From Schmidtea polychroa (taxonomy: Eukaryota), in the NCBI GenBank assembly GCA_044892525.1, contig CM097886.1:2790001-2854000 (forward strand): a stretch of DNA of 64,000 nt, read 5' to 3'. Position numbers and translations under genes: made by a program. Position 1 is the first letter of the stretch. Every line of letters begins with the position of its first letter. Positions 17,375 through 38,546 of the stretch are shown one piece after another. Under the pieces are notes generated by a model. It was not told where the DNA came from and made no database searches. It saw only the letters and a list, made by a program, of their open reading frames with translations.

Positions 17375-17414
17375 TCATTATGTTTATTTACAATTGGTTT
17401 TAATGACCCTTAAT

Positions 17415-19337: not shown

Positions 19338-19530
19338 TTCTAAATCATAGACATCGATTAATCTTTTTATTATGAAAAAGGAATTTATTCATTATTTACT
19401 GTTTCTTGGGAAATTTTCGCATCATTTTTGGGTTTTCGTATTTAGGGTTTTCATACTATTATTATATAATATTTTATTAGTTATATACACCGATATATAC
19501 AGATTATTATATACAACATTATTCGATTGG

Positions 19531-20919
19531 TTATTCCGTTCTACCCTTCTCCTCTTTCCTCACGGTCATCTTGATATATATGGTATCATTTCTCGCCATA
19601 TCTTCTACTCTTTGTTGTGAGATGAACGTAGGTGCTCCTGTTGCTGATCCTTCTTCGTTGAGGGGCCTCTGGTAAGCTATTTGATTCCCCGTTGTTTTGA
19701 AGCTTTGCTCATATATACTTTGGTTGTTCATCAGAGTAATATCGATTTTTGCCTGGAACGGCCATTCTAATATTTCGTCGTATTCTCCTTTACATAACAG
19801 AAAGAAAATCGAAAAGTGCGTATCTAATCCGGTTCCGTCCCCGTTGGGATATAGCTTCATTTTCATTTTGTACCCATTTTTCCAAGAATGGAATGTAGGA
19901 CTTGTTATTCTTGTCTCTTCTCCGGTTTTTGCTTTTCGTATTCTTTCTTTTACTCCCGTTATTTTCCATATGTAGGGTGCTGTTGGGGTTATCTCATTTA
20001 GATTTATTTCCCGTATTTTCTGATGTAGCTCCTTGGCCTGATTATTACTAATTTCTGTTCGGTTTATTTGCATCTTTATGTTTGCTCGGGCTTCTTCGAA
20101 CGCTTTCCTTTCTTCTAGTAGTTCTTTGACTAACACTTTCAACGATGTTATCTCTATCTCCATTTGTTTTACTTTCTCTTCGCTTTCTTGTAACGCAGTC
20201 GACCACATTTCTGCGTGAGTTGAAGCATTTTCTACTAAATGATGTGGTAACTCACCTCGGTGTAGTAATTTCTGACAACCCCATCTACCTAGTACACATG
20301 TCATTCTTTTCTTTTCGCATTCCCTTAGATGCTGTGCCACCTTTATTGTTTCCCCTTGGTTACATCCGTTTGGGCATTCCCCACTGAACTCCGCACATAC
20401 TCTCTCCTCTTGGACATTGTGATGTTTGAGGGTGAGATTTATCCACGTATCTATTTCTCCACAGTGTTCACATCTTTCCAATCTCTCCTCACACTGCCTT
20501 TGATGCTCTTTTTCTTCGCTTGCTCGAATGGTTTTATGGCACCTTTCACACTGGCCAATTCTGTACATACATTCTCCCATATGTTGTACTACCTTCCATA
20601 TTACTCCTTTCCATTCGCATGGGGCATTTTTGCATCCCAGGTTGGTGTTTAACATGTCTTTCACTGCGGCTTTATCCTCGTTAGTGTCTTCTAAACTCGA
20701 TATTAGTGTCTCTTTACACACCGGGCACCTTTGTGGTCTATTCTTTATTGCTTCACTGATACATTCTTTACATACTCTGCATCCACATTGCGTTTGGTGA
20801 GGTTCCTTTAACAACTTTTCACATATTCCGCACATAACATGTTTGTGTATTCTGATCGTTGTAGATTTTCGGACTTGCTCGACAATCTCTCTGAACTCTT
20901 CTCTTTGTCGTTTATCCAT
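19531..20919 (-). CDS. TRAF: Intronless full-length TRAF homologue (RING, zf-TRAF repeats, coiled coil, MATH), 462 aa
   Basis: CGIC..CGCRVCKEC..CPVC; five Cys/His fingers; YIWKI...SPTF...GYKMKMKLYPNGDGTGLDTHFSIFFLLCKGEYDEILEWPF...G.PTF. Confidence 0.93.
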   Translation of the reverse strand: MDKRQREEFREIVEQVRKSTTIRIHKHVMCGICEKLLKEPHQTQCGCRVCKECISEAIKNRPQRCPVCKETLISSLEDTNEDKAAVKDMLNTNLGCKNAPCEWKGVIWKVVQHMGECMYRIGQCERCHKTIRASEEKEHQRQCEERLERCEHCGEIDTWINLTLKHHNVQEERVCAEFSGECPNGCNQGETIKVAQHLRECEKKRMTCVLGRWGCQKLLHRGELPHHLVENASTHAEMWSTALQESEEKVKQMEIEITSLKVLVKELLEERKAFEEARANIKMQINRTEISNNQAKELHQKIREINLNEITPTAPYIWKITGVKERIRKAKTGEETRITSPTFHSWKNGYKMKMKLYPNGDGTGLDTHFSIFFLLCKGEYDEILEWPFQAKIDITLMNNQSIYEQSFKTTGNQIAYQRPLNEEGSATGAPTFISQQRVEDMARNDTIYIKMTVRKEEKGRTE

Positions 20920-21004
20920 TCTATAATTATATGTACAAATAGTTCTTATCGATACAGGTTCGATATTTTATTTACAATTATTTACATTTTGAGCTAGGTT
21001 TGGT

Positions 21005-21364
21005 TTAGGGTTCGGAAGAGTCGGCTTCGTGTCCGCTCTCCTCTCTATTCATTAGCCATTCCGACCAGTCTTCTATTTCTGTCTGTTCTGCTTCCTCCAT
21101 CATTCTGTCTATTTCAATTTCCTGTCGACGGCTATATTGGGTTATCCTCTCTATCTCTCTTTGCATTTGTTCGATTTTTAACCTCTGGTCTTCAATTATC
21201 TTCAAATAACTAAATCCTCTGTTCATACTCTCGATCAGGTTTCTGTGCATCGTCAGTCCTTGTTCTTGCAAATTGGACACTAATTGTGCTAATACGGCAC
21301 ATTGTTGCTTCCATAATTCTTCAGTTACTGTATTGTGGTTCATTTCGTTATTTCCTTGATCCAT
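21005..21364 (-). CDS. 119-aa coiled-coil protein, unknown (track start is a TTG at 21388; first ATG at 21364)
   Basis: Same strand and purine-rich composition as neighbouring ORFs; TAG acceptor 2 nt before the ATG; AATAAA at 20972-20967. Confidence 0.65.
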   Translation of the reverse strand: MDQGNNEMNHNTVTEELWKQQCAVLAQLVSNLQEQGLTMHRNLIESMNRGFSYLKIIEDQRLKIEQMQREIERITQYSRRQEIEIDRMMEEAEQTEIEDWSEWLMNREESGHEADSSEP

Positions 21365-21524
21365 TCCTAATTTATATACTCTTTTCAACTCTTATGTAAA
21401 TTTAATTTTATTTTATGATTCCCGTTATTGTATAATATTGATACCGCGCTTATATAAAGATATAATACTGTTATATACATAAGATATACTTACTTTTTAC
21501 AATTATATACAGTCATATTCCTTT

Positions 21525-22526
21525 CTATATACGTGAGTTTGGAGGGCGCTGAGCGTTCCAGGCCTCCACCCACTGTTCTTGTTTGATATCACTTGGTCGT
21601 TTCACTCGATGTTGGAAATTTCTGATTCGAGTCATCTCTAGTTCTCCGCGATGTCGTTTACCCTTAATTATTTTTATTGTTCCCCCCGTTATGATTAAGA
21701 ATGCCCCTGTTATTATTATCCCACTGATCCACATCATCTGCTTCACGCTTATACTCTCTGGTTTTTCCTGGTTTGTTAATGTTGATATTGCTTCTGTACT
21801 TTTCTCGTTCCCTCTTTTGCCGTTTCCTTTCATCCTTTCCCGTATTCTTGCTATTTCCTCGTTCATACCCTCCTTTGCCATCTTTTGTATTTTTTCCATC
21901 TCTTCTTCCGAAACATAGTTGTCCTGAGCTTCCTCGCCGGTTTTCTTGTGCTTTCCTCCTTCGTCCTTTTCGTCGTGGTTTTTCCTTTTCTTTCCTCTTT
22001 TCCCCGGGTATCGTCGGCATTCTCTTTTTGATTCGTTTCTCCAGATACAAACCGTATATTCCTTCGGGGGCTGCTGCTGCGTCACATATTGATGGCATCT
22101 CTCACCCGGTCCTAATCTTGAAATACAGACTTTGTGCTCTTTTCTTGGTTGGAGCTGCGTTATTACTACTTCGCCACCTTTTCCTAGGTGTACCTCTTTT
22201 CCTTTAACGTTCGTTATTCTTTTCCCGTCTCGGTTTCGGTATGCTTCTTGTATTCTTACTTCTGTTATTGGTTCTGTGTCCTCATTTATCAGTACTAGTT
22301 TCTGATACGCTCTAGACATGCATCTTCCTAGTATGCACCTTTCCTTTAAGTCCCATTCTTCCTTTAAATCCCACTGCTGCTCTTGTGCTTGCTTTTTCTT
22401 TTCTTGTTTTAGTTCGTCCTCTTTGCTATCTTGATTCTCCGCTTCTTTGGTTTCTTTTATCGTCCTCGTCCCTCCATGAGCTGTTACTAACTCTATCATG
22501 GTAAGCATAATTATCATTAATATCAT
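21525..22526 (-). other. C-terminal second membrane-protein module (signal-like segment, Cys-containing ectodomain, TM, short tail)
   Basis: MILMIIMLTMIELVTA|HG (22526-22479); VVITQLQPRKEHKVCI, resembling an FN3 strand motif; TM MMWISGIIITGAFLIITGGTIKII (21737-21666). Confidence 0.6.
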
Positions 22527-25500
22527 ATTTGTCTCTATTTCTTTGTTAGTGAAAGGTAGGCATACCCTCTGTTTTCCATTATTCGATTTTTCCTCCTCTT
22601 TGGTCTTAGTTCCCGGGCTGTTTCCCTCTCTTTTCGTATCCGAATCCTTGTTTTCCGGTTTACCCTCCTCCGGTTCTCTTTTCTCTTTGTCCTCCTTTCG
22701 GCCTTTTCCGTTATTGTCATCGTGTTTATCTCCCCCGCTGTCGTTTAAAATGTCGTCCTCGACATTTATATCGTTCAATAATCTGCGATATGCTGTTAGC
22801 ACTCTGTTTCTTGCTAATTTTGCTTCGAATTCAAACTCTTTTCTACCCGTTGCAGCATGTCTCTTTCTATTCCATTCTTTAACTAACTCTCTCAATTGCA
22901 TACGACGATGTTTCCCAATTCGTTGTTGCTCGTTCTGATTTTGCGTGAATTTTAGGTCTTCTCTATTTAATACTATTAAAATAATTTTAGGCGTCCCCCC
23001 CTTAGTTAGGGTATTCTTTACCATCGCATTTTCTCCGTTTTCGTAGAATTCGTTTACATTTATCGCATATTTATTATTTTGTGGTACTCTCCAGGTTAAT
23101 AATAATTTCATTGCTTCTAGATTTTTCCGTACCGTATTCCATTGAAACTGAGATGTGTTTTTGCACATATTTTCAACTTCTTCTTTTGTCGCATTTTTGC
23201 AAATAAATCTGATCATTTCTAAGTTTGGCTGTATGGTTGCCCAGTCCAAGGTGGAATTTCCTTCATTGGACTTTTCGTCTAGTTTCGATCCTGATTGATG
23301 TAGGATGTGGAGTGTTTTTGGGTGTATTTTCGTTATAGCTGCATACATCATGGCGGTTTCACCTTGTTCATTTTTCGTGTTGGTTTCCTCGCCCATCTCT
23401 CCAAGGATTCTCACGATCGTTATTGCTCTATTTTCTTTCGCCGCTAGTATTGCTTGTTGTAGGGGTGTTCTGGAATCCTTCGTTACCATCGTAAATGCTC
23501 GAGGCAAGAAGGTTTTGATTTTCCCGATATCCAAATCCGTGGTTTGATCTCTTGCGTATGTGTGTACGGCTTTTATTATTTTGGACAATATTATGTCGTC
23601 TGGCAGCTCTAGCATTTCCTCAAAGAACACTTCTTTTGCTTTGCGTATTATTGCCTCTTGATCTATACTCATTGATTTGGTTTTGATGACGTTGTTTGTG
23701 ACCGTTTGGTTCGTTGTTGACTTTGATTCCCTGGATTTCTCATACCTTATTTTCGTTTTCTTTCCGTTTGGATTATTGATTCGTTCCTCTGCTGTAAGTA
23801 TTTGGATAATATCCAGGTAATTCTCGCGGATGTTATTCATTGTGTCCATCATATATAACACACTTACCGTTTCCCAATATTTATTTCGTACTTGGTTAGT
23901 AAATTGGAATAGTGATTTTTCGAATGTGTCGATTCGCTTTTTTGTTAACTGTTCGTCTTTGTGATTTGTGAAATTTATTCCTCGTTCTAGTAATTGATTC
24001 GGAATTTCGAATAAATGATGTCCTTTCATAGCTTCTCTCATCAGCGTGTTCTCTCCTCTCGTGAACGCTTCGTTTACGTTGATCATATAATCGTTTTGAA
24101 TTGGATTTCTCCATGTAATTAATATTCCGGTAATTGTCGTCAGTTTTTCTTTGATCGCTGTTAACAATCCATCATACATGTTTCCGACTTCCCGATTGTC
24201 CTCATATGATAGTAGTTCCATCAATGACGTGAACGCCTCGGTACTTCTCCCTTCGATGGCATGATGTAGAGCGTTTTTCCGCTCGTGGTCTTGTGTAGTT
24301 ATTTTCGATCCGGTATCGAGTAATGCGGTTATAATGTCTTTTGTTTTGCCTCTGTTTGCGGCTATCATTAATGGTGTGTAACCTTGGTTGTTTGTTTGTT
24401 CTGTTGATCGCTTGCAGTCGTGAAATGCTTCTATTGTTTCTAGTATTTGCTCGTTGTTACCTACTTTCATGAGTTTGTGTAATGGTGTGTCTCCGTAATG
24501 ATCTGTTATTGTAAATAATATTGGCCATTGGCTTTTGACTACTCGCAATAATGGGTGTGTCCTTTCTCTATTTGCATAGTTCTCGATCATCGTCAATAAT
24601 CCTCCTAATATTTCGAAATCTAATCGATCTTTTGCCCATCCAGGTATTTTAATTTTTACCTCCTTTACAATCTTTTCCGCTTCTGATGGTTGGATACCTA
24701 ATCGTCCAGTGATTGGTTCTGCGAGTTGTTGCATCATGTTCATTCGGTAGGTTTGCGAACGTGTGGTTAATGTACGGCCTTCTGGTTGACTAGTGGCTGT
24801 TTTTGGAATTGATTTGCATCGTGCCACGTTTACGTATATTGGTCTGGTAAAGGGGTTATTTACCAATTTCACTCTTACATTAGTTTCGCCTACGAATAAG
24901 ATCTCATATGGTCCTTTTCCGTTGCGTTGTAACTTTTTTGTGGTTCCTGGAATTAATTCCGGGGTTTCTATCATTACCCAATCACCTGTTTGGAACGTAT
25001 GTTGCTTCACGTTTTTCTTTCGATCGTGTAAATCTTTATAACTTTCCTGGTAGAACTTGATATTTAATCCCGCAGTTTCCCAAATTTCTTGCATTCTTTC
25101 CTTGAATTTCGTAACATAATCATCGATCTCCATATACTGCGATATCGGTGGTTGGTATTCCAGGTCCATTGGCATATTACATTCTCTTCCGTACATTAAT
25201 TTGAATGGGCTCATTTTCGTTGATGCGTGAATCGACATTCTGTACGCCATAAGACATAGGTTTATATATTCATCCCAATCTCGTTGGTGACGGTCAACGT
25301 AGTTTGATAACATTTGTATAAGTGTTCCATTAAATCTTTCCGTCATCCCATTGGTTTGAGGGTGGTATGGAGATGTTCTTAGTTTTGCTATTTTGAAGTA
25401 ATTTGTTACTTCGCTCATTATCTCACTCATAAAATTAGTTCCCTGATCGGTTAAGATTTGTTTTGGTGTTCCATATCGGCAACATATCTCTTCTACCAAA

Positions 25501-28500
25501 ATTTTTGCGATTGTTTTAGCTTTTTGGTCTGGCATCGCGAATGCTTCTGGGAATTTCGTAAGAAAGTCTGTGATCACTAGAATGTAAACGTTTCCTTTAT
25601 CTGACTCTGGTAGTGGACCAACTACGTCCATGGATATCATTGTCATTGGTTCTATTGGTACTGGCATTGGTGTTAAAGGTGCTTTCCATTTCGATCCAGT
25701 ATTCTTCCTGGTTGCACAAGTTAGACAATTTTTTACCCATTCAGTTACATCTTCAGTTAACGTAGGCCAAAAATATTTCTGTTTCATTCTTGCTAACGTC
25801 TTTTTCGATGACATATGTCCTCCCAATCTCCCATCGTGATATTGCGTTAGTAACTCTTTTCGTCGGTTTTCCGGTATACACATTAATCGTTTTTCCCCAT
25901 CCATTATCAGCAACCAATCTTTCTCTATAATATATCGGTGTCGGTGTTTATCCATATGTTCTTTTAATTTTTGGTCTTTCGCATATACCTCTGTCTTTCC
26001 GGTTTTTACATAATCGATAATTTGTTTTAATTCCGCGTCCTCTTGTTGGTCCTTTCGTAATTGACAGAAATCCAAATCTTCCGCTACTATTAAGCATATG
26101 CGTTGCATTTCTGGATCCACCAAATCTGGGAAAATAAATCTTGACATACAATCGGCGTTGGCATTTGCTCTTCCCGCTTTAAATTTTATAAATGGGGAGT
26201 ATTCTTGCAATTGCATGGCCCATCTCATCAGTCTACTGGACGCTTCTTTATGTTGCCCTAACCACACTAATGGTTGATGGTCTGTGGTTATGCATATCTC
26301 ATGTCCCCATAGTAAATATCGGAAGTGTTTGATAGCTTGTATTATAGCCAATGCTTCTCGTTCTGTTACCGAATAGTTCTTTTCGTGCTTTTTGAATGTT
26401 CGACTGTAATACCCGATTACTCTCTCTTTTCCCTCATCGTCCAATTGTCCCAGAATCGCGCCTGCCGCGTACCCGCTTGCATCCGTTGCCAATAGAAATG
26501 GCTTCTTAAAATCTGGGTGTACGAGGATAGGTGCTTCGATTAGTTTGTCTCTCAGCGTTTCAAACGCCTCTTGTTGTTCCTTCCCCCATAAGAACGAAAT
26601 GTCCTTCTTTACTAGTTCCTGGATTGGTTTTGCAATTCCTGCATAATTTTTGATAAATTTGCGATAGTATCCGCATAATCCTAGAAATTCCTGAACTTGG
26701 GTGACAGTTTTCGGTGCTGGACATGTTTTTATTTTCTCAATGTTTCTTGGATCTGGCTCCTTTCCTTTAGCTGACACTATGTGTCCTAAAAACGTGACTT
26801 TTTCCTTTGCCCAATCGCATTTTGATGGTTTGAGTTTGAGTTTCCACTGTCTTAATCTAATAAATACGTTTCGGATATCTTCTAGATGTTGTTCAAATGT
26901 CGCTGAATAGATTAGTAAATCATCAATATATACCATACATTGTTTGATTCCATGGGTGACAAAGTTCATACACCGTTGAAATGATGCTGGTGCGTTAGTC
27001 AGTCCAAATGGCATTTTCCTGAATTGATATAGATCTCGTCCCAACGTGAAAGCTGTTTTCTCTTTGTCCTCATCTTTGACTTTAATCTGCCAGTATCCAC
27101 TTTTTAGATCTAGAGAAGTAAAATATGCTGCCCCTTGCAACATCAATAACATCTCATTGATGTCCGGCAATGGATAGGTATCTCTCTTGGTCACTGCGTT
27201 TAACTTCCGATAATCGATACAGAATCGTTGGGTGCCATCTTTCTTTTTCACCATGACCACTGGGAATTGCCAAGGTGAGCAACTTGGTTCGATTACTTTT
27301 GCGTCTAGCATCTTTTGTACTTCTGTTTCGGCTATTTCTTTCTGCATTTCTGCTAGCTTGTATGGTCTCAATGCAATTGGGGTTTCGTCTATGAGTGGTA
27401 TTGCATGTAAGGTAACATCACATGTACCCAAGTCTAAATCTGAGATGGCGAATATATCTTTATATTCTACCAACAATCGGTGCAATTTTTTCTTTTCATC
27501 ATTCGTCAACAACATACTATCTATTGTCCATAATTCATCATCTTTGATCATCTCGTTGGTCACTTTCGGTAATTCTATGTCCATCATTGGGGTCAATCTT
27601 CCCAATTTTTCGTTCTCATAAATGATTTTGTCTTCCTCTTCGAAATTCGTGATGTTGAGCGGTATCACTCCTTCTTGGTTTATTGTGATTATTTCTCTTG
27701 CGAGTGGTAATTCTCGTCGCTTTTCGAATGACTTGCTTGGTTCAAAGATAACTTCTCCTTCCATACCCGTATCCACTTTTATCTGACAAATCATCTGCGA
27801 TTTTGCTGGTACTATTATTTTTTCTGGACATCTGATGACTGCATTCATTTTGCATATTCTACCGGTTTTGTCTTTTAAACACATGGTTGTTAAGTCAATT
27901 ACGACTTCTTTTAACAATTCTGGCATCAAATCCGTTCCGATTATGCATGGTACGCTAAGTTTTGGTATTACTGCCAAATACGTTTCAATTTCGTTGTCCT
28001 GGTATCTCAATGTAGTCCACCATCTTCCGACCACGTCCACTGTTTCTTTACTACATGCTATGATGTGAATTGTTGTTGATTCGATATCTTTCCAGTGTTT
28101 ACTGGGAATTTGATTAATCGCTATCGCTGATACATTAGCTCCTGTGTCTATCATAGCATTGGTTTCTTGACCATTGATTTGGATCATGACTGTCACTGCT
28201 GGACCTCCAGGTAAACTCATCGCTGCTATTGTTCTTACGTCATCTGCTTGATCTACACTTTTGGTACGTCGTGTTGGCATATAATGCATACCGGGTTGAC
28301 TCGGTAATTGCGGATACATATTTTGTGTCATGGTCAAAGCTGTTTGTGGTCCCACGATATCCGGTGGTATATAGCTTCCATTGGCGATCCAGGTGTTTGT
28401 CTTTTCCTTTTCCCAATATGGTGCCGTTTCCATTGGTTTTTCGTTTGGGTTTCTGTTTGGATAAAGACATTTATCGTTCCCGTTATCATCGTCGTCACTA

Positions 28501-31500
28501 TCGCTGTTAGATGATTGGCTTCTAAATCGGTCCAAGAATTTTGGCTTATTCTTTTTCAATTGTCGTCTTGTTGCTTCATCGTACATTACTTTCCGGAATC
28601 GTCTGCCTACTTCTTCGTCGGTTCCTTTAATCTTTGTTAATATTTTTATCAATCGCTTTATCCGATGGATGTCTTTTGAGTGGCCATGTAATACCATGGT
28701 TTTAGCTAAAAATGGTAAGAAGCCTACTATCATTTTCCAGTTAACTTTCTTTTCCCGCTTGTATATATCGAAACAAGCTAACATTTGTGTTAGTATTACT
28801 CTGACTATCTGAATTATGAGTATGATCCCTAATATCCCGGCCATCATTTGTCCGAAAACTAAGAATCTTCCCCACATTGCTTTCATCATGTTTGACGTAG
28901 CTTGTTGAAAATGGTCTGGCGATAATAGCAGCTCGTAATTCGGGCCTGATTGATAGTTTGTGCCCCCAGTTATTGTTACCATATTAGACAAAATGGATTC
29001 TCGTCTGGCTGGGAAGAGTACGTTAAGTCGTGCTGTTTCTAGATCTTCTGGGGAATACATACCACCGTTTGACACGTCTATAGGTTTGAAATCCAGCTCT
29101 GTGGCGAGTTCTATTAATCCAAATTTCTTGGGCTCCTCGGATATGGTTTTTCCCGGTAACATCATCCATTTCCCATCGGGCCTTTCATATAAAGGTCCGT
29201 ATGCATTAGAACAGTTAAAGAGATTTGGGTAGAAACCCACTGGATTCATAATTCTAGTGACTGGTTGGACGAATCGATTTTGTCCTTTATAACGAATTTC
29301 TAATTCATTTGCACATCTCTTTTCGGGTAGTATGGATTTTTCTGGCATTCGTGCATACGTCTTGGTACACTGGTATGTGTACATCACTTCTCCTACCATT
29401 CTACCAAAGTGTCCATCTGGTAATGGGAGTGATGGCATCGTGTTATCGGGGTGCGTTATCGCAATAGCTAGCTTTGTTTTCAATATTTCTTTATTCAATG
29501 AACAATCGTTTTGTATCAGATCGTAATATACTTTTTGCAAGGTCGTTTGTCCACGATGAAATAGAAAATCCATTTTATTATTTGCATATAAGTATAGTTT
29601 TACGTCCTCCGTTGCTATCTTTCCCACTGCTCTATCGATTATTTGTCTCGACATGTAGATACCTGCGTAATTGGTTTTATATACTATACTGTCACATTTG
29701 GTGGTTTCTTTCTCTTTGATAAATCTCATACCTAGATCTGGATCGTCTGTGATTAATGCTGTTGGTGTCTTCTGCGTTGAAAGTCTCTTTTCTCTGGGAG
29801 ATGGTGGCATTGGTTTTCCATTTCGCATTCTCACTCTGTCGTTTCCATCCTCGTCGTTCTCGTTCTCATATATTTCTCCTTTTACTTCATTGAACAAAGC
29901 ACTTTTTAACAGTTGGAGTCGGCATTTTTGGGTATTAGCTTCATAGATTATAGTTGATACTCCTGTCCTACATACGTTTTCTGTAGCTTTACACGTTGGG
30001 TTGGTCTTCATTTGATAATTATTTGCGTCAAATTGCGCTTCGTATTCTTTTAATTCAACCGTGTAAGACTCGATCACTACGACTCCCGATATTACCTCGC
30101 CTCGGATCGTATACGTACCTCCGTTACATGACCCATCTGATGATTTTACTTTTCCGGATACGTAAACACTTTCGGTTTTAATCATTCCAGTTTGTCCGTG
30201 AATCGTCACTCCGTTATGCATTTTTAGCGCTCCGGTTCTAAATAGCTCTTTACAATCCTCTCGTTGTATTGATACGATTTCTTTATCCAGACCAGGTAGT
30301 ATAAGAGTCGAATACGAATATTGTCCACAGTAATATGCGAGTACCTTTTTTGATACCACGCATTCCCTTGCTTGCGTTCTGATGAAATCTGATTCTTGAT
30401 ATACATGGTAAGTAACTTTTGTTCTCACGATGTCCAATTTGTTGGGTGAGGCTTGTCTGCATTCTTCTATGTCTCTCAACGAGTATTTGTCTCTCATTAT
30501 CATATTATCACAATCGTAGATGGTAAAACCTGTTGCTCCACTTGTGCACAACATCCATATCATCATAGTCATCATTAACGAATTTATCGATGCTTTTCGG
30601 CTTGCTGGGTCTTTCATGGGTAGTTCCCATTCTAGTTCATTCAACAACTTCTTCAATCTAACTTGCATCGACCTTTCTTGCTCATTTTTTCGTGGCGCTT
30701 GTATAAGTCTTTTCCATCCTCCGGCACGAATAATATGTGGTTCAATAGTATTCTCTATGATTGAAACGGTCATTTCCACATGATTTGCAAACTGTTTATT
30801 TGGTATTTTCCTCGCAGCTAGTCCCATCAAATTATACATCAAATAAGTGATTACCACTAGGTGATGCTCGTCATCATTTGCATTTGTCGTGAGCTGCTCA
30901 ATCACTCTCTTTGTTTCGTCCCAATCCGTTTTGGTGGTTTTCGTTTTCTCTTTGATTAACTTTGGGATTATCCCCGAAACGATGTGCCATAATTGTCTAG
31001 CTTCCGTACTGGCTACTTTCCGTTGCCACAAACGTCTAAGTTGTGGGTTTGTTATTATTAACATATCTTTGATCAATTCTCGTATCCATTTTTCTCCTCT
31101 TTCGATCGTTGGTTGGGCTTCCTTTAGATCCCATACTATTTTATCCAATTTTTCTAATCGAACTTGCCCTTGTTCTTGCTTTAATTGTTCTTTGGTTTTG
31201 AACTCAGACTTTTCTCCTTGTTTCTTAGGTCTTCCTTTTGCCCGTTTTTCCATCATCGTTCCGGCTTCTCTGGTATTTTCGTAATTCGGATTTCTTTCGT
31301 TATCCGTTCTGGGTAATGAGCTATCGTTATTTCTTAGCCACTCATTCCATTCGTCTATTATTTTATCGGTTTGACCTTCTGGTGTTACTTTCGTTGGTTC
31401 TCTTTGCTTCTGGAATTGTTCATCCGTTTCGGTTTCCGTAGTATTGTCGATGATTTCTTTGCTGTTCAGTTTCGTTGGTTGTTGATAACTCGTTGATGGC

Positions 31501-34500
31501 TGGTTATTAGTCCACATTTCGGCTCCTGTCGGCCATCTCACTAATAGCGGTGATCTTTCTCCTGGTTCATCGTCACTATCTTCCAGGATTATCTCTTCAA
31601 CTTCTTCAGTTTCATTAGATTTACTTGGTGCTTTGTTCGGACTTGGAGTACTCAAACTGCCTTTTGTTGGTTTAATAATTTTACTTTTCCTTTTTAACGG
31701 TTTTCCCAACGTTTCTGCCATTGTTAACACATTTGTCTCTTCCAATCTCATGGGTGTTATCCCGACGTCTGCATTATCGTCTAGTGATTTTCCGAACAGT
31801 TGCAGATGGAATGGAGTTTCATATGCTAATTTCTTTTTTAATTCTCTAATTTTTGTTGTTGGATGCACCTCTAGTTCCTCGATGCTCTTGTCCGGATACT
31901 TGATTCGGATGTGATACCTCTCCTGAGTGTCTTGTGCCCATTCCTGATTTCTCCATTTTCGAATAATTTGTTCTAGCTGTTCTGGATACCATTCATTATA
32001 TTGCCGGTATTCCTCTATTGCCTTTGCCATTCCTCTCAGATTGTGGATGTTCTCTGATGTCTTTAAGATGATGTTAGCCAACGCTACTACTTGGCGTTTT
32101 TGATTTTTCGCTCCCATTGCTAAGATATCGCCTAATTGTTTATATCTTTCTGTCTCTTCTCGTTCTCTTGCTTCCGTCGCTTCCTCGCCGTCCATATCAG
32201 CATATTCACGTTCCTTTTTCCTCATTGCATGAATATGTCTCGCTTCATTTTCGCTTTCTGATGTGACATCCGTCTCGCTTTCGTCATCTGATGTCTGTCC
32301 CCTTGCTTCCTCTTCATATTCTGGGGGTTCCTCTTCTTCTTCCTCCGATTCACTTTCTGTCTCACCAATGTCTGTTTCTACGAAGATTCCTTTCCGGATT
32401 TCCCATTCCTTACTTTCTGCATTCCACACTCTTTCCCATGGGGTTCGTCTGCAGGATCTGGTATTTAATTTCGTGATTTTTCCTTGTAGCTCTTTTTCTT
32501 TTAACCATTGTTGGTGGATTTCAATTATTTCTGTCGATTTTTGATACAACGTTTTCATCCGGTCTCGTATTTCTTTTTGATATGTTACATCTCTTGTTCG
32601 GAATTCATCCATTGGTACTATCCTGATTATCTGATGATTGTCCCACATACCCATTTCGCTTAACGAGGTGTCGTCCTCCGCTCGTAATATTATCTTATCG
32701 TACATCATGACTACATCATCCACCATACCATCACTACTTTCGCTACGTACCTTTTCCGTTATCTCTTGGTTTATTTTTGATACCAAGTCATCCACTGTAC
32801 TCTGATTGCTCATTCTTATTCGTCGTTTTTCTTCGTTCGGTAACCATATGGTTATTTCCAACCTCTGTGGCTGGGTTTCTTTTAACCTTCCATATTTGTG
32901 GATCAAATTTATGGTTCTCCAATCACTCATTCGGAGCATTTCTGTATCTCGCAACCGGCTCATTAGTTCGTACATGGCTGGGGCTCGTCTGGTGATGAGT
33001 AAATCCCAGTTGTCTTCTACTTGTTCTTGAATTTGTTTGATCAGCTTATCCAGGTTTCGTCTCAGAGTACATTGTTTTATTTGTTCTAATTTCAATTTGA
33101 TATTAAAATCATATTCTGCCTTGGCATCTTTAGCCCAATCGTAAAGGTGGGCTGGTTGTTTTTCTTTATGCAACTTCAGTATTTGCGTTTCTCCTGGCCA
33201 TATTAGTGCATCTACTAAGTGCATATCTGGTTTGATCCGTCCTCCTTGGTATTGATACAGATATTCTTTCTTTCTCGAACTTCCCAAATGTTCTCGTATC
33301 CAATCGAAAAGTTCGTCGGTGACTGTATTTTTTATCCACATTCTTTCAAGTCCTCTACTCGTTCCAATTTTTATTACATACCGCGTGGTATCGGCCTGCT
33401 TCATTTTTTCCATATAGTTTTTTATAATTGGTTTTTCCTCGTTTGGTATTAGATCTTTCTCGTTTCTTTCCAATTTCATCACTTTTTGCACGAATCGCCT
33501 GAATGGTATTACGTCGATGAACTCTTGGTTCCTCACTACTACTGGGAGTATTTCGGCTACCTGTTTTATCGCTTCCTCCCTTGCTTTTCTCAACTTTATT
33601 TCGATATCTTCGTCTTCACTTTCGCTGGTTATCTCGTTTCCGCTTTCTTCCTCTTTGATTTCCCCTTTTGAGGGTTCGCTTATTTCATTCGGCTGTAGTA
33701 TTTCTCCACCCAAACTACTTACATAATCTTCTTCTTCGTCTGACGATGCTACATCTTTTGTCCTTTTCATCATATTGATTTGCAAGTTTCTCATCCTTGG
33801 TACTCTCTTTAGTTTCTTTCTTTCGAATATTGTTGTTTCTTCTGATTCTGATTCTTGTAGCATTTGGTGATTTAGTTGACTGGTTTGTTCCTCGCTCTTG
33901 TTATTTTCATCTTCTGTCTCAGTTTTCGCTTTATTATGTTCTTTTTCGATTTTATCCTTTATCTTTTTCCAGAATATTTTCTGAATTCTCTGGTTTCCCT
34001 TTGAAATCGTGGTTGAATTCTCTGTTTTCATTTCCGTTGTTATTTCCTTTACTTTTTCTGGTTCAGTCATGGGTACTACCCTTGGGCTTTTCCCGTAATT
34101 GTAGCAATACTGGCTCTTCATGTCTTTTACTAACTTCATCATATTTATTCGCAATGGTTGTTCTTGTCGTTGTTGGTTGCGTTCTTGTTTTATCCTCTCT
34201 TCCTCGGCCTGTAGCCTTTGCCATTCTTGTACATGTTGATGCACTTCATAATTGTTGAGATTTTCGGTACTCCTCATCATACGTATATTCTGGGTTTGTT
34301 GTGGTGCTGATTCTTGTCTTGGTCTCATCATTTGTTGCATCATCTGTTTCATCTGCGAAATTTCCTGCATAACGTTCATTTGTTTTCCTTCGTTAGGGTT
34401 ACTTTGTCGTTGCGGATTCGCTATATAATTATTATTTCGCTGTGGTGGTCGTTGTTGTTGGCCCCTTTCTCGGCAATCTCTGGAGATGTGACCTGGCTGA

Positions 34501-35378
34501 CCACAGTTAAAACAGCCTCGCAATTGGCATACATTTTCGGTATGTCCACGCCGTCCGCAACGATTACAATTTGAATTTCTATAACAATCTCTGTCCCAGT
34601 GTCCTGGTTTACCGCATGTTCGGCACTGCTTGTTATCGTTCATATTTCGCCGATTATTGAAATTGTTCTCATTATTCGGGTTGTTACGATTACCATTATT
34701 CCCGTTTGATCGTCCTTGTGGTGGTTTGAAAATTTGGTGCGCTCCTGGTATAAATTGATTCATTTTCGGTTCTTGATTGTTGTTATCTCCGTTATCCGCT
34801 TTCGCTATTGCTGTCGCTATCCTTCCCTCCTCTTGCATAATATTCATTTGAGCTGGAAGGTGGAGCTCGCATCTTGTAGCCCAATCTATGGCTTCCTCTA
34901 ATGTTTTGCACATTTGACAACCTACTGAGGCTCTTACTTCTTCTCGGCGTAATCCCTCTATGAAATAACCAATCAGATTTTCTTCGGGTAATTTTCCATT
35001 CATTGCTTTCTTCGCTAATCTCCGCAATTCACTGGCATATAATGTTATCGATTCGTTTGCTCTTTGTTTCCTATTTGCTAGTTCGCCCAACGCCTGGTTG
35101 ATTGGCTTACTGGCTCCGAAGGTTTTCTTCAGGAATGTTTTAATATCTTCCCACTTTTCTAATTTCGTGTCTCTCTCTTTAGCTTCTAAATATACCTCTA
35201 ATGCACTATCGCACAAAAACAACGGCATCCTTTTACTAATTGCTTCGGGTGTCCATCCACACACAGTGATATAAACTTCAAAATTAGTTATGAACGTTGC
35301 TAGCTTGTTTGCATTTCCGTTGAACGGTTCTCCTCTGAACTTCTCTTTATACTCGTCGGTTTTTACGACATTCGTCAT
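21525..35378 (-). CDS. 4,617-aa single-ORF polyprotein: Gag-Ubl x3-Bcl2-like-Env-PR-RT-RH-IN-ANK-membrane module
   Basis: Uninterrupted ORF; domain motifs are itemised in the following features. Confidence 0.95.
   Translation of the reverse strand: [4617 protein letters not shown]
22995..24500 (-). other. Two ankyrin-repeat blocks (24020-24500, 22995-23475) fused downstream of integrase
   Basis: [48 protein letters not shown]. Confidence 0.85.
24800..25860 (-). other. Integrase (HHCC, DDE, GPY/F)
   Basis: HDGRLGGH...CLTC; [34 protein letters not shown]. Confidence 0.95.
26150..27420 (-). other. pol: Reverse transcriptase (YIDD 26930-26919) and RNase H
   Basis: [75 protein letters not shown]. 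Confidence 0.97.
27600..28200 (-). other. Aspartic protease (DTG at 28148) followed by a dUTPase-fold-like spacer
   Basis: [12 protein letters not shown]...IIGTDLM; spacer [15 protein letters not shown]...IPLNITNF. Confidence 0.85.
28791..30587 (-). other. env: Envelope glycoprotein, chuvirus (Jingchuvirales) G-like / class III fusogen-like, with internal signal peptide and TM anchor
   Basis: Signal [21 protein letters not shown] (30587-30528); YDC, [51 protein letters not shown]...LFPA motifs; furin-like REKR (29795-29784); TM [25 protein letters not shown] (28865-28791). Confidence 0.8.
30700..31170 (-). other. Bcl-2-like helical domain
   Basis: BH2-like [14 protein letters not shown] and a divergent BH1-position segment [16 protein letters not shown] at Bcl-2-like spacing; the NWGR motif is not conserved. 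Confidence 0.55.
31719..33386 (-). other. Three ubiquitin/SUMO-like modules (33168-33386, 32613-32861, 31719-31916)
   Basis: Each about 65-85 aa with a beta-grasp-like pattern, e.g. [30 protein letters not shown]...[10 protein letters not shown] and [29 protein letters not shown]. Recognised by eye only. Confidence 0.55.
34473..35378 (-). other. gag: Gag region: capsid-like domain plus three CCHC zinc knuckles (aa 252-302)
   Basis: [19 protein letters not shown]...W; [42 protein letters not shown]. Confidence 0.9.
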
Positions 35379-36632
35379 GATTGGTGTTCTAGGTTCGTCT
35401 GTTTCTTTTAAATTGTCTAACGATGTGACTAAACTTTGGGCTGATAATTCTTCGGTTGACGTTGCTAAACTATTAGTGATATCGGACAGACTTTCTCTAC
35501 TTCGAGATCGACTAGGGGTATATCCGAGATTTTCTTGGTCAAATATGGGTACTTGATTGGTTCTTCTGGATCCTTGTGATATTCCTCTTTGATGTTTAAT
35601 GGATCGTCCTCTTTTGAGTTGTTGTAATTCGTCTCCTGAAAATAATACGTCTCCTGGCTTACTTGAAGATCTAAGATTGGGTTTATCCGTGATTCCTTTC
35701 TTACGCTTCTTGGTAATTAGCGGCTATTGAATTGGTCGCGTTCGGTTCTGATTGTGTTTCTAATCCTTGGCAGATGGCTGCTAATACTTCTTCCGTTCGG
35801 GAGTCTTCCGGTTGCTGTGTCTCTCGGTGCGGGTTCTGAATGGATTTATCCTTGGTTGATTGTCGATTTCTTCGAATTCCTTTTGTGCAGGTTCTGGATT
35901 GTCTTGGTTGGCTGGATTGGCTTGATATCTAAAATGAAAAAATGATCTCGTGTTGCATTTGCTTACACGACTTCATCATTCTTTCTACAACGTTCAAAAA
36001 CAGACACCTTTTAGGTTTCTGTTTGTGCTTCCCCTATCTTTTGTGAAATCCTTTCTGCGGGTTATAATATCCCATCAGCCCGTATTTTCCGTCGATTTTA
36101 AATTATCTATATGGGGTAGTAACAATTATCTATAAAGTCGTAATAATTATCTATTCGTTATCAATTATAGTAAAAATAGGTCGTTGTCGGTCTCTGCTTA
36201 TTACCCCCCTTTCATTTTCCTAATCCTTTTGCGCTGTTGTCGCTATTTTACTTTTCATATTCACTATTATTACGCTCGGTTCTACTCTGGAACCAATAAA
36301 ATGCATTTTCCCGGTTTAACCAAAAAAAATATTCCGTAGAGTTTCTCTACTTCACTGGGATCCCTTTAATTAGTTAGTTACTTTCCTCTTTACTCATTAT
36401 CATCATTTCATCTACTCTTTATTTTCTATTATCTCTTTAATTCGTTTCCTTCTTCCCTTTCCTTTTTCATTATAATCTTATTTTCTTTTCCACGAGCTCG
36501 TTTATTTCCTCTCTAAACTCGAATTTTCAAAATTACATTCAATTTGTTCTAGCTAGCTTTAATATTCCATATCACTAGTAATTTAAATATTATCTCATTG
36601 TAGCTTAACTGCTATCTCTCGCTTTTCTAGGC

Positions 36633-37150
36633 CTTTACGACTGGCTGGCACTATTCAACAGCTCAATCTTCTTCCTTCTGATCGGTTGGACTATTCAACA
36701 ACTCAATCTTACGACTGGCTGGCACTATTCAACAGCTCAATCTTCCTCCTTCCTGATCGGTTGGACTTTTCACAACTCGACCTTACGACTGGCTGGCACT
36801 ATTCAACAGCTCAGTCTTCCTCCTTCCTGATCGGTTGGACTTTTCACAACTCGACCTTACGACTGGCTGGCACTATTCAACAGCTCAATCTTCCTCCTTC
36901 CTGATCGGTTGGACTTTTCACAACTCGACCTTACGACTGGCTGGCACTATTCAACAGCTCAATCTTCCTCCTTCCTGATCGGTTGGACTTTTCACAACTC
37001 GACCTTACGACTGGCTGGCACTATTCAACAGCTCAATCTTCCTCCTTCCTGATCGGTTGGACTTTTTCACAACTCGACCTTACGACTGGCTGGCACTATT
37101 CAACAGCTCAATCTTCCTCCTTGACCGGCTGGATTATTCGACAGCTCGGC
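36633..37150. repeat. Tandem array of a 74-bp unit (about 6.7 copies) in the element leader
   Basis: Unit starts at about 36634, 36707, 36781, 36855, 36929, 37003 and 37078. Confidence 0.93.
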
Positions 37151-37743
37151 TTTAATATTCCTCGCTCTGCATGCTTCTATTTCTCTTTTCTTCTTTTACT
37201 CTAGTTTACCATTTTCTCTATCTACTTTTAATTTGTCGACTTAATCTTTACCGCTTGGGAGTGTTTCCCCTTTCCCCCCTTGCTCAAAACGCACGACGAT
37301 CGCGATGATCCATTTCTACATTGGCATGGTGATCAGTCATGTCGCAAAAACTTCTCATCATATGCGATGGTACCCCGCCCTACGCTTCTTACTTGGGTTG
37401 ATCAGTTATCCCCTCCCAACGGGTTCTTGCAATAAGACGTACCGCCCGAAGGTGGCTCGGTTTGTACCCCTGCAGTCTATATTGGGACTAATTCCACGTT
37501 ATTCAACCCTCTCTTCATTTGATTCCAAAAAAAAAAAAAAAAAAAAAAAGGAATAAAACAAAATAAACACGCAAATGTTCATTCGTCATGCAAATTTTAT
37601 TAGTCCTAATCATCAAAACTTTTTAAAGACGAATTTATTTATCATAAACATAAAGATTGAATCATTAACAGTACGTGTTACTTCAACAATTTCATGCATT
37701 CTTGTTCAAACATCGTATACTTGCTGTTACATCGCCGGCCGTT

Positions 37744-38229: not shown

Positions 38230-38546
38230 AGCTGTTGGAAAAGTAATGTTTTAATAATATGTAGTAAATTAATAGTTAATTCGTTAATTGGTTTCTTTAA
38301 CCATTGTTAATTATTTAATTTGACTACTTTATCTCCTTTATTTATATATATCCTTAATTTTTCTATTATCTACATTTTGATTTTCTCTACTTAGTTCCTA
38401 ATATAATTTAATAATCAATAGTCAATTTGCATTCGTCAAGCAATGGTCGGTTGAAAACAGAAAATCGATGTGATAAATCCCTTTAATTTTGTATGAAAAT
38501 CCCGGTGAATTTCGCATTCGTTAATAGAAATTTCGATCGACTGTAT

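What the first reader, a model, noticed from the sequence alone, without database searches (positions are those of the whole stretch)
27600..30587. Envelope gene fused in frame between Gag and protease: a Gag-Env-Pol polyprotein
Seen: with no stop or frameshift, the ORF passes from Gag and cargo into a signal-like segment (aa ~1598-1617), a ~550-aa Cys-patterned ectodomain with an REKR site, and a TM (aa ~2172-2196). About 215 aa later come DTG, RT, RH and IN. Established: env in retroviruses, errantiviruses and env-bearing BEL/Pao elements lies 3' of integrase, and chuvirus-like glycoproteins are known to have been captured by LTR elements. Inference: co-translational ER insertion and signal-peptidase cleavage would release the Gag part and leave Pol on the cytosolic tail of a type I glycoprotein. 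That is a flavivirus/togavirus-like topology in which Pol could be packaged via Env rather than as Gag-Pol, at a 1:1:1 ratio. If not already reported, this is a distinct enveloped-retroelement architecture.
Basis: partly seen in the sequence, partly recalled or inferred. Interest (0 to 1): 0.95.

Follow-up and report, generated by a model that had tools for sequence, protein, structure and literature searches.

The report
Envelope gene inside Gag-Pol polyprotein
A giant, intact retrovirus-like element carries a chuvirus-type membrane-fusion protein in frame in the middle of its single Gag-Pol reading frame; the layout is real and conserved in relatives, but it was already described in 2019 for the planarian 'Burro' elements.

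Summary
A 4,617-codon minus-strand ORF (35378..21525) has no stop, where about 315 are expected by chance. It runs Gag/CCHC, about 1,280 unassigned residues, a signal-like stretch (aa 1598-1617), a 554-aa ectodomain with 14 Cys, a TM (aa 2172-2196), protease (DTGA at aa 2411), RT, RNase H, integrase and ankyrin repeats.

The middle part matches Pfam Monjiviricetes_fusion (E=1.7e-70). Its model (pLDDT 84) matches chu-like virus glycoproteins (E~1e-38) and herpesvirus gB (E~1e-14), so it is a class III fusogen.

The element is 30.4 kb, with identical 4,160-bp LTRs (TG..CA) and a 4-bp target duplication.

Thirteen divergent relatives have Env followed by protease in one ORF, and four also show Gag or CCHC upstream. 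All compared keep a hydrophobic stretch with small -3/-1 residues at a fixed distance before the ectodomain. Seven keep a 21-residue TM.

The second hydrophobic stretch has only 10 uncharged residues and basic flanks, so it is unlikely to span the membrane. Pol is therefore probably cytosolic.

The architecture is not new. Arkhipova and Yushenova (2019, PMC6431247) reported env in frame between gag and pol in planarian Burro elements. The topology-based mechanism was not found in the literature searched and is untested. REKR is not conserved.

The parts
12331..42731 (-). Whole LTR element, 30,401 bp, flanked by a 4-bp target-site duplication ATAG (42735-42732 and 12330-12327, read on the minus strand)
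   Evidence: Two direct repeats 100% identical over 4,160 bp. Ends read TGTTGGG...CCCAACA and the ATAG flanks were read directly. Element GC is about 39% against about 25% in the flanks.
38572..42731 (-). Upstream (5') LTR, 4,160 bp. It contains a 250-aa ORF (39107-39859). An assembly gap starts 40 bp beyond it (42772).
12331..16490 (-). Downstream (3') LTR, 4,160 bp, identical to the upstream one
38548..38564 (-). Primer-binding-site-like sequence starting TGG, 7 nt after the upstream LTR. It was not matched to a tRNA.
   Evidence: Read directly. This is inference only.
21525..35378 (-). ORF1, 4,617 codons plus stop: Gag, unassigned region, Env, PR, RT, RH, IN, Ank, C-terminal hydrophobic stretches
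34470..35378 (-). Gag part (aa 1-303): Retrotrans_gag aa 52-145 and CCHC zinc knuckles up to aa 303
   Evidence: Pfam E=3.1e-9 and 7.7e-10
30618..34469 (-). Unassigned 'cargo' (aa 304-1587). No Pfam family at E<=0.1. There is a faint ubiquitin-like stretch near aa 1157-1225.
   Evidence: A single-sequence AF2 model of aa 1380-1600 failed (pLDDT 42).
30528..30617 (-). Internal signal-peptide-like segment. It has an in-frame Met1588 and a basic n-region, a hydrophobic core I1598-C1611, and a c-region with A1615 (-3) and G1617 (-1). The predicted cut is G1617|F1618.
   Evidence: The same offset to the conserved Y-D-C holds in 12-13 relatives.
28866..30527 (-). Env ectodomain (aa 1618-2171): 554 aa, 14 Cys, class III fusion-protein fold
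   Evidence: Pfam PF24664 E=8e-72 on the piece. AF2 pLDDT 84. Foldseek finds gB in PDB and chu-like virus G in BFVD.
29784..29795 (-). R-E-K-R furin-type motif (aa 1862-1865) in a variable, low-confidence loop. It is not conserved in relatives.
   Evidence: pLDDT is 52-56 in this block of the model.
28791..28865 (-). Transmembrane segment (aa 2172-2196), with an uncharged run F2172-V2192 of 21 residues
   Evidence: Kyte-Doolittle peak 2.53. The run length of 21 is the same in all 7 sequences compared.
28689..28739 (-). Second hydrophobic stretch (aa 2214-2230), read as a membrane-proximal part of the cytosolic tail and not as a TM
   Evidence: The longest uncharged run is 10 residues in all 7 sequences. 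Net positive charge lies between it and the TM in all 7, and after it in 6 of 7, the window included. Matches to Pfam PF24664 reach profile positions 616-650 of 653 in several relatives, ending well beyond the TM, so the model appears to cover this stretch.
28191..28790 (-). Tail and linker between the TM and the protease (aa 2197-2396). It starts basic and then becomes acidic and low-complexity. No Pfam family matches.
27915..28190 (-). Retropepsin (RVP, aa 2397-2488; D-T-G-A at aa 2411)
25359..27251 (-). RT (aa 2710-2868, Y-I-D-D at 2817), RNase H (aa 2931-3060), integrase (aa 3168-3340)
23205..24455 (-). Ankyrin repeats after the integrase (aa 3642-4058)
21666..22526 (-). C-terminal region bounded by two hydrophobic stretches (aa 4285-4303 and 4545-4571)

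Best explanation
This is a full-length, apparently intact and recently inserted giant Ty3/gypsy-type endogenous retrovirus of the planarian 'Burro' kind. It sits on the minus strand in AT-rich host DNA. Its single 4,617-codon ORF1 has a captured chuvirus-type class III fusion glycoprotein in frame between Gag (plus about 1,280 unassigned residues) and PR-RT-RH-IN. All of that is shown here. The mechanism below is inferred. The glycoprotein kept its own signal peptide, which is now internal. When the ribosome reaches it, the chain is targeted to the ER, the ectodomain is threaded into the lumen, and host signal peptidase cuts after G1617. This separates Gag-cargo, which is left with a C-terminal hydrophobic anchor on the cytosolic face. 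The 21-residue TM stops transfer, so the basic tail, protease, RT, RNase H, integrase and ankyrin repeats are made in the cytosol as the tail of a type I membrane protein. The element's own protease then frees them. This resembles a flavivirus- or pestivirus-like structural polyprotein more than a retroviral Gag-Pol.
For: - Architecture: the ORF has no stop in 4,617 codons where about 315 are expected, and the Pfam domain order is as stated.
- Element integrity: the two 4,160-bp LTRs are 100% identical, with TG..CA ends and a 4-bp duplication ATAG.
- Fusogen identity: PF24664 at E=1.7e-70 and an AF2 model with pLDDT 84 and pTM 0.60. The best BFVD matches are chu-like virus glycoproteins (E=1.6e-38 to 1e-33, TM up to 0.60). 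The best PDB matches are about 50 herpesvirus gB entries (E=3e-14 and up, probability 1.0).
- Conserved order: P0001-P0003 are 37-40% identical over env, and Env is followed by PR in one ORF in P0001-3, 6, 7, 8, 9, 11, 12, 14, 17, 18 and 20. Gag or CCHC lies upstream in the same ORF in P0003, P0007, P0017 and P0022.
- Conserved signal: a hydrophobic stretch of at least 12 residues (Kyte-Doolittle 1.8-3.3) lies 10-25 residues before the conserved Y-D-C in every relative compared. Residues at Y-4 and Y-6 are small or short aliphatic (G/A/T and A/T/S/G/V/I) in the window and 12 relatives, although the stretch itself is not conserved in sequence.
- Translation start: relatives mostly lack a Met between the upstream protein and this stretch, so they cannot start translation there.
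- Membrane orientation: the TM is 21 uncharged residues in 7 of 7 sequences and is followed by net positive charge. The second stretch has only 10 uncharged residues, with positive charge between it and the TM in 7 of 7 sequences and after it in 6 of 7.
- Compartment fit (established knowledge): the 14 conserved-pattern Cys of the ectodomain suit the lumen, and PR, RT, IN and Ank are cytosolic-type domains.
- No alternative release signal: no 2A-like skipping motif is present in any of the four long ORFs.
Against: - Nothing here tests translation, cleavage or topology. No signal-peptide or topology predictor, RNA-seq or proteomics was available.
- In the window, an in-frame Met (M1588) sits 10 residues before the hydrophobic core and would make a textbook N-terminal signal peptide. 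Separate initiation from a spliced or internal transcript is therefore possible for this copy.
- All other env-bearing LTR elements known to me express env from a spliced mRNA (own knowledge).
- The window's ectodomain has only one N-x-S/T sequon.
- The host and identity with a named Burro family could not be checked, because no reference sequence was at hand.
- The 100% identical LTRs next to an assembly gap leave a small chance of assembly duplication.
Confidence: 0.6

Rival explanations
1. Env is made, as in retroviruses and errantiviruses, mainly from a spliced subgenomic mRNA. Its start codon would be its own (M1588 in this copy) or donated by an upstream exon. Gag-Pol may come from a transcript in which env is spliced out. 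On this view the in-frame arrangement is a packing solution, not a translational one.
For: M1588, a basic n-region, a hydrophobic core and an A-x-G motif together form a canonical N-terminal signal peptide. Spliced env mRNAs are the rule in known env-bearing LTR elements (own knowledge).
Against: Most relatives have no Met in the 30-60 residues before the signal (P0003 has none within 60). Both junctions, cargo to env and env to PR, stay open in frame in many relatives that are only 37-40% identical. There the upstream region cannot even be aligned, and chance gives 7e-7 to 2e-40 for the window alone. Pol has no start of its own downstream of env.
Confidence: 0.28
2. The internal hydrophobic stretch acts as an uncleaved signal-anchor. 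Gag-cargo, Env and Pol then stay one chain that crosses the membrane twice, with Gag and Pol both cytosolic and Env as a luminal loop, until the element's protease cuts on the cytosolic side.
For: The hydrophobic stretch and the TM give an even number of crossings. The relatives carry two or three protease domains, which would suit heavy cytosolic processing.
Against: Small residues at -1 and -3 are kept at a fixed offset before the ectodomain in the window and 12 relatives. The free viral homologues begin with a Met, about 20 alignment positions before the conserved Y-D-C (the tool's column report). A class III ectodomain with an anchored N-terminus would be unusual (own knowledge).
Confidence: 0.08
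3. The second hydrophobic stretch (aa 2214-2230) is a real second TM, so protease, RT and integrase end up in the ER lumen and the proposed mechanism fails.
For: The stretch is conserved (W-K-x-x-x-G-x-x-P-F/L-L/M-A-K/R) and moderately hydrophobic, with a Kyte-Doolittle 19-residue mean of 1.57 in P0001 and P0002.
Against: Its longest uncharged run is 10 residues in all 7 sequences. It contains a Pro and two basic residues. Net positive charge lies between it and the TM in all 7, and after it in 6 of 7, the window included. Matches to the Pfam model of the free viral glycoproteins, which have no downstream domains, extend well beyond the TM and so appear to cover it. Ank, RT and IN are cytosolic-type domains.
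Confidence: 0.03
4. The arrangement is an assembly artefact or a decaying, non-functional env relic.
For: The LTRs are 100% identical next to an N gap. One relative locus (L004) has the same gene order split into five called genes.
Against: A target-site duplication and proper LTR ends are present. The same order occurs in contigs from at least four separate ENA assemblies. There is no stop in 599 env codons (P=4e-19). All invariant Cys, Gly and Pro columns of a 62-sequence alignment are kept, and the fold is predicted with high confidence.
Confidence: 0.01

Closest known systems
Burro / GYPSM1 giant gypsy-like LTR retrotransposons of planarians (Jurka 2007; Grohme et al. 2018; Arkhipova and Yushenova 2019, PMC6431247)
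   Same: Both are over 30 kb with long LTRs. Both have one enormous ORF1 starting with Retrotrans_gag and CCHC knuckles, and both carry RING, MATH/TRAF and ankyrin accessory domains and tandem repeats. In both, env lies in frame between gag and PR, with hits to mononegavirus glycoproteins. The host DNA is AT-rich.
   Different: ORF1 here is 4,617 aa, against 4,873 (S. mediterranea Burro-1) and 5,140 (D. tigrina). Pfam finds no BIR, BCL2 or dUTPase here, and RING and TRAF/MATH are separate ORFs. The review relates env to gypsy Env (an F-type protein), whereas here the fold is class III (gB / chuvirus G). The review does not mention a signal peptide, TM or topology. Direct sequence comparison was not possible.
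Anakin: mosquito BEL/Pao elements with a captured chuvirus glycoprotein (Dezordi et al. 2020, PMC7642597)
   Same: The same glycoprotein family (chuvirus G) was captured by an LTR retroelement.
   Different: Anakin belongs to a different superfamily (BEL/Pao, not Ty3/gypsy). The paper shows its glycoprotein inside the LTR bounds and reports no in-frame placement between gag and pol. [quoted passage not shown]
Errantiviruses (insect gypsy-type endogenous retroviruses)
   Same: They are Ty3/gypsy elements that became enveloped by capturing a viral fusion protein.
   Different: Their env is baculovirus F-like (class I). It lies 3' of pol as its own ORF and is expressed from a spliced mRNA (own knowledge).
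Structural polyproteins of flavi-, pesti- and hepaciviruses
   Same: This is a likeness in how it would work only. A capsid-type protein is followed in one chain by an internal signal peptide, host signal peptidase makes the N-terminus of the envelope protein, and a viral protease finishes the job on the cytosolic side (own knowledge).
   Different: Those are RNA viruses with no reverse transcription and other fusion-protein classes. There is no homology, and this is not a membership claim.
Herpesvirus gB and other class III fusion proteins
   Same: The fold matches over about 640 aligned columns, with a long central helix and a single C-terminal TM followed by helical tail segments.
   Different: Identity is only 8-12% and TM-scores are 0.34-0.40. 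The closest relatives are chu-like virus G proteins, not gB.

Membership tests
Ty3/gypsy (Metaviridae) LTR retroelement | Domain order PR-RT-RH-IN, with gypsy-type RT_RNaseH and Integrase_H2C2 domains | tested here: met
   Pfam: RVP 2397-2488, RVT_1 2710-2868, RT_RNaseH 2956-3060 (E=6e-39), Integrase_H2C2 3168-3226, rve 3243-3340
Ty3/gypsy (Metaviridae) LTR retroelement | Two LTRs ending TG..CA and a 4-6 bp target-site duplication | tested here: met
   The 4,160-bp LTRs are 100% identical. Ends read TGTTGGG...CCCAACA and ATAG lies on both sides.
Burro (giant planarian gypsy-like elements) | Total length over 30 kb and one ORF1 of more than 4,000 aa that begins with Gag and CCHC | tested here: met
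   The element is 30,401 bp and ORF1 has 4,617 aa.
Burro (giant planarian gypsy-like elements) | env in frame between gag and PR | tested here: met
   published statement
Burro (giant planarian gypsy-like elements) | Accessory RING, MATH/TRAF, ankyrin, BIR and BCL2-like domains | tested here: inconclusive
   RING (ORF 37744-38229), RING+MATH TRAF3-like (ORF 19531-20919) and Ank (ORF1 aa 3642-4058) were found. BIR, BCL2 and dUTPase were not found by Pfam even at E<=5.
Burro (giant planarian gypsy-like elements) | Sequence identity to Burro-1..4 / GYPSM1, and a planarian host | not testable with these tools
   No reference sequence or host genome was reachable. The window's ORF1 is not on record and Grohme et al. 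2018 is not held. The only indirect support is the AT-rich flanks, as described for S. mediterranea.
Monjiviricetes / chuvirus-type class III fusion glycoprotein (PF24664) | Significant match to the family profile | tested here: met
   E=1.7e-70 and 238 bits against a cut-off of 27. A profile search found 1,987 relatives at E<=1e-3.
Monjiviricetes / chuvirus-type class III fusion glycoprotein (PF24664) | Class III fold (beta-rich domains around a long central helix) | tested here: met
   AF2 pLDDT 84 with a central helix at residues 339-386 of the model. Foldseek finds gB and chu-like virus G.
Monjiviricetes / chuvirus-type class III fusion glycoprotein (PF24664) | Signal peptide before and a single TM after the ectodomain (type I) | tested here: met
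   The features are present and conserved in position. This is a sequence inference only, because no dedicated predictor was available.
Monjiviricetes / chuvirus-type class III fusion glycoprotein (PF24664) | Trimer with fusion loops and membrane-fusion activity | not tested
   A monomer model only was made, and no activity data exist.
Errantivirus | F-type (class I) env as a separate ORF 3' of pol | tested here: not met
   Env is class III and lies 5' of PR within ORF1.
Anakin (BEL/Pao + chuvirus G) | BEL/Pao-type Pol | tested here: not met
   The Pol domains match the gypsy-type Pfam models RT_RNaseH (E=6e-39) and Integrase_H2C2. No phylogeny was made. The glycoprotein's exact place in Anakin was not read from the paper.

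The most novel reading that the evidence does not exclude
In a whole clade of flatworm-type giant and compact gypsy elements, the captured class III glycoprotein kept its signal peptide and TM inside the Gag-Pol frame. The polyprotein would then be a membrane-threaded precursor. Host signal peptidase would uncouple Gag from Pol, and Pol would be delivered to budding sites as the cytosolic tail of Env, a packaging logic not known for any reverse-transcribing virus. A second signal-plus-TM module after the integrase in relatives hints at a multi-pass, flavivirus-like layout for the whole ORF.
Probability: 0.45. Interest if true: 0.75.

Novelty: already known. Interest (0 to 1): 0.45.

Why it matters
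Retroviruses and env-bearing LTR elements otherwise place env after pol and link Pol to Gag. An element that translates its fusion protein in the middle of Gag-Pol would have to solve membrane insertion, processing and Pol packaging differently. It would show that a reverse-transcribing element can adopt the polyprotein logic of enveloped RNA viruses.

The layout itself has been on record since 2019, so the value here is threefold:
- It confirms the layout in an intact, apparently very young copy.
- It corrects the fold assignment to class III (chuvirus G / gB-like).
- It shows that the internal signal, its cleavage motif and the single TM are conserved across at least 13 divergent relatives. 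That turns the topology model into a concrete, checkable hypothesis.

Tried and rejected
- **2A-type skipping.** I searched the window ORF and P0001-3 for a 2A-like ribosome-skipping motif that could free the signal peptide. None was found.
- **Furin site.** I considered REKR as a conserved maturation site. I rejected it because it lies in a variable loop with an insertion and relatives lack it there.
- **PDB by sequence.** A sequence search of the PDB with env gave no hit at E<=1. Only the fold search worked.
- **Word-indexed search.** This search with env alone gave just 2 hits. The exhaustive profile search was needed.
- **Cargo upstream of env.** Pfam at E<=5 gave only a faint ubiquitin-like hit. 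A single-sequence AF2 model of aa 1380-1600 had pLDDT 42, so no fold search was made. The BCL2-like domain reported upstream of env in Burro-1 could not be confirmed here.
- **Host identification.** The window's ORF1 is not on record. The TRAF3-like ORF's best named hits are cnidarian and fish proteins at 27% identity, which is uninformative. The flanks have no long ORFs.
- **Literature.** Grohme et al. 2018 is not held. Searches for later work on the Burro env found nothing beyond the 2019 review.
- **Locus L005.** The Env-Pol ORF there has no gag in the 755 nt upstream. A truncated copy and a real variant could not be told apart.
- **Splice sites.** I did not attempt splice-site prediction, because it is too weak in AT-rich sequence to weigh.

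Full report
**Observation.** The finding sits inside one minus-strand ORF, 35378..21525, of 4,617 codons. That frame has no internal stop. The other five frames of the same stretch have 122-453 stops, and base composition predicts about 315.

The chance of an open frame is 2e-40 for the stretch between the zinc knuckles and the signal-like segment. It is 4e-19 for signal to TM and 7e-7 for TM to protease.

Pfam on the whole ORF gives this order:

| Domain | Residues |
|---|---|
| Retrotrans_gag | 52-145 |
| zf-CCHC | to 303 |
| Monjiviricetes_fusion PF24664 (E=1.7e-70) | best stretch 1868-2207 |
| RVP | 2397-2488 |
| RVT_1 | 2710-2868 |
| RT_RNaseH | 2931-3060 |
| Integrase_H2C2 and rve | 3168-3340 |
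| Ankyrin repeats | 3642-4058 |

- Nt 30587 is the first base of I1598.
- The hydrophobic core I1598-C1611 is followed by A1615-T-G1617.
- The ectodomain, F1618 to about Q2171, has 554 aa and 14 Cys.
- REKR is at aa 1862-1865.
- The TM is at aa 2172-2196.
- DTGA is at aa 2411, 215 residues after the TM.

**The element around it.** Two direct repeats, 12331-16490 and 38572-42731, are 100% identical over 4,160 bp. On the minus strand they begin TGTTGGG and end CCCAACA. The element is flanked by ATAG on both sides. A TGG-initiated, primer-binding-like sequence lies 7 nt after the upstream LTR. The element is 30,401 bp at about 39% GC, in flanks of about 25% GC. GC and GC3 are the same in gag, cargo, env and pol.

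Other parts of the element:
- A RING-finger ORF (37744-38229) and 74-bp tandem repeats lie between the LTR and gag.
- A TRAF3-like RING+MATH ORF (19531-20919) and four more ORFs lie downstream of ORF1.
- Each LTR holds a 250-aa ORF.
- An assembly gap starts 40 bp beyond the upstream LTR.

No gene of the element is broken.

**What the middle part is.** The piece aa 1527-2400 alone scores E=8e-72 against PF24664. No solved structure matches by sequence. An AlphaFold2 model built on a 62-sequence alignment has mean pLDDT 84 and pTM 0.60. It shows beta-rich domains, a 48-residue central helix and a long C-terminal helix through the TM.

Foldseek against BFVD puts chu-like virus glycoproteins first: Soybean thrips chu-like virus 4 (E=1.6e-38), Tacheng Tick Virus 4 (TM-score 0.59-0.60), Wenling crustacean virus 14 and a xinmovirus. 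Against the PDB, the first 50 matches are all herpesvirus gB (best E=3e-14, probability 1.0, about 640 aligned columns, TM-score 0.34-0.40).

**Topology features and their conservation.** I aligned the window with five relatives and then checked more.

- *Signal-like stretch.* Every sequence has a hydrophobic stretch of at least 12 residues (Kyte-Doolittle 1.8-3.3) lying 10-25 residues before the conserved Y-D-C that opens the ectodomain. The stretch is not conserved in sequence, but its position is.
- *Cleavage motif.* The residues four and six places before that Tyr are G/A/T and A/T/S/G/V/I in the window and 12 relatives. That is the -1/-3 pattern of a signal-peptidase site. By the alignment tool's own column report, the free viral homologues start with a Met, about 20 alignment positions before the conserved Y-D-C. 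The stretch thus looks like the glycoprotein's own signal peptide, now internal.
- *TM.* The TM has an uncharged run of exactly 21 residues in all seven sequences compared and is followed by net positive charge.
It is conserved, but its longest uncharged run is 10 residues in all seven, it holds a Pro and two basic residues, and net positive charge lies between it and the TM in all seven and after it in six of seven, the window included. Matches to the Pfam model of the free glycoproteins also extend well beyond the TM and so appear to cover it. I read it as a membrane-proximal part of the cytosolic tail.
- *Domains after the TM.* These are protease, RT, integrase and ankyrin repeats, which are of cytosolic type (established knowledge).
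- *No skipping motif.* None of the four long ORFs has a 2A-like motif.

**Relatives.**
- A search restricted to long proteins found three ORFs of 3,771-4,029 aa that are 37-40% identical over env and contain env with PR, RT, RH and IN.
- An exhaustive profile search found 1,987 relatives of the env part. The best are all long or cut polyproteins, followed by free proteins of about 650-690 aa. One of these is annotated 'Glycoprotein' in a beetle genome.
- Pfam shows Env followed by protease, and where the contig allows by RT, RH and IN, in one ORF in P0001, 3, 6, 7, 8, 9, 11, 12, 14, 17, 18 and 20. P0002 shows the same by its precomputed domains.
- Gag or CCHC lies upstream in the same ORF in P0003, P0007, P0017 and P0022. 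In P0017 Gag sits only about 300 residues before env, so the layout does not depend on giant cargo.
- The contigs come from at least four ENA assemblies.
- One locus (L004) keeps the same order but is split into five called genes.
- Relatives have two or three protease domains after env, whereas the window has one.

**Literature.** Arkhipova and Yushenova (2019, PMC6431247) describe the planarian giant gypsy-like Burro elements (GYPSM1; over 30 kb; ORF1 4,873 aa in Schmidtea mediterranea and 5,140 aa in Dugesia tigrina). These carry Gag and CCHC, RING, MATH/TRAF, BIR, BCL2-like and ankyrin domains. [quoted passage not shown]

The review relates the domain to gypsy Env and does not mention a signal peptide, TM or topology. 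Other searches found nothing later on this point. S. mediterranea DNA is over 70% A/T, like the window's flanks.

The window element fits the Burro description in size, ORF1, env position, RING, TRAF and Ank. Pfam finds no BIR, BCL2 or dUTPase in it. I could not compare it with a Burro reference sequence or name the host.

**Mechanism.**
- *Shown:* the architecture, the fold, element integrity and the conserved membrane features.
- *Inferred:* the internal signal targets the nascent chain to the ER, and signal peptidase cuts after G1617. The ectodomain folds in the lumen and the TM stops transfer. The tail with PR-RT-RH-IN-Ank is made in the cytosol and released by the element's protease.

Gag-cargo would be left with the signal as a C-terminal membrane anchor. 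Both halves would then stay on the same membrane patch, and Pol would be linked to Env rather than to Gag.

*Main rival:* a spliced env mRNA. The window has an in-frame Met (M1588) ten residues before the hydrophobic core, which would give a canonical N-terminal signal peptide. Most relatives have no such Met. Both junctions remain open in frame across lineages whose upstream parts cannot even be aligned, which argues for translation straight through.

*Lesser rivals:*
- An uncleaved signal-anchor.
- A second TM that would put Pol in the lumen.
- An assembly artefact or a decaying relic.

A 1:1:1 output follows from a single frame, but nothing here shows that it holds in the cell.

**Corrections to the finding.**
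- REKR lies in a low-confidence loop (pLDDT 52-56) that carries an insertion. It is not present at that place in relatives.
- The architecture is already reported.

**Verdict.** The fusogen homology and the topology logic are supported by conserved sequence features but are untested. The layout itself is already known for Burro. Interest is moderate. The new content is the class III assignment, the clade-wide conservation of the internal signal, cleavage motif and TM, and the argument that Pol is cytosolic.

Noticed in passing
window 21666-22526 (-), ORF1 aa 4285-4303 and 4545-4571; P0001 aa 3548-3974, P0002 aa 3302-3718, P0003 aa 3528-3829: ORF1 ends with two hydrophobic stretches. In relatives P0001 and P0002 the same place holds a signal-like stretch, about 390 residues rich in Cys and N-x-S/T, a strong TM and a short tail. 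That looks like a second type I membrane-protein module after the integrase, and it would make the whole ORF a multi-pass precursor. No family was matched.
   Followed up: partly
window 37744-38229 (-) and 36624-37148: A 161-aa ORF with a C3HC4 RING finger (E=3e-11) and about seven 74-bp tandem repeats lie between the upstream LTR and gag.
   Followed up: partly
window 19531-20919 (-), also 21005-21388, 18282-19337, 17415-18167, 16718-17374 (-): A TRAF3-like protein (RING + MATH, 462 aa) and four further ORFs without family matches lie between ORF1 and the downstream LTR. The best named relatives of the TRAF ORF are cnidarian and fish TRAF3 at 27% identity.
   Followed up: partly
window 12866-13618 and 39107-39859 (-): Each 4,160-bp LTR contains the same 250-aa ORF with no family match. 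The LTRs are unusually long and 100% identical.
   Followed up: no
P0001, P0003, P0006, P0007, P0008, P0009, P0012, P0017 (relatives): Relatives carry two or three aspartic-protease domains between env and RT, and P0001 has one more after the integrase. The window has a single one.
   Followed up: no
window about 31700-31910 (-), ORF1 aa about 1157-1225: A faint ubiquitin-like stretch (Pfam E=0.086) lies about 370 residues before the signal peptide. It ends in a single Gly, not Gly-Gly. The 2019 review lists a Ubi2/SUMO-like motif upstream of env in Burro-1.
   Followed up: partly
window 45549-46216 and 48269-48929; ORF 45505-45813 (-): A 668-bp inverted repeat (97.8%) lies in the flank and holds a reverse-transcriptase fragment (RVT_1, E=1e-12). 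It is probably another, rearranged retroelement.
   Followed up: no
L003 2-38 and 16741-16777: This relative contig (16.8 kb) has a 37-nt repeat near both ends and no long LTRs. It may be an assembled full-length transcript (an R-like repeat) and not genomic DNA.
   Followed up: no
L005 1-755: In this relative, the Env-PR-RT-RH-IN ORF starts about 130 residues before the signal stretch, and the 755 nt upstream are non-coding. It may be a truncated copy or a variant without gag in the same frame.
   Followed up: partly
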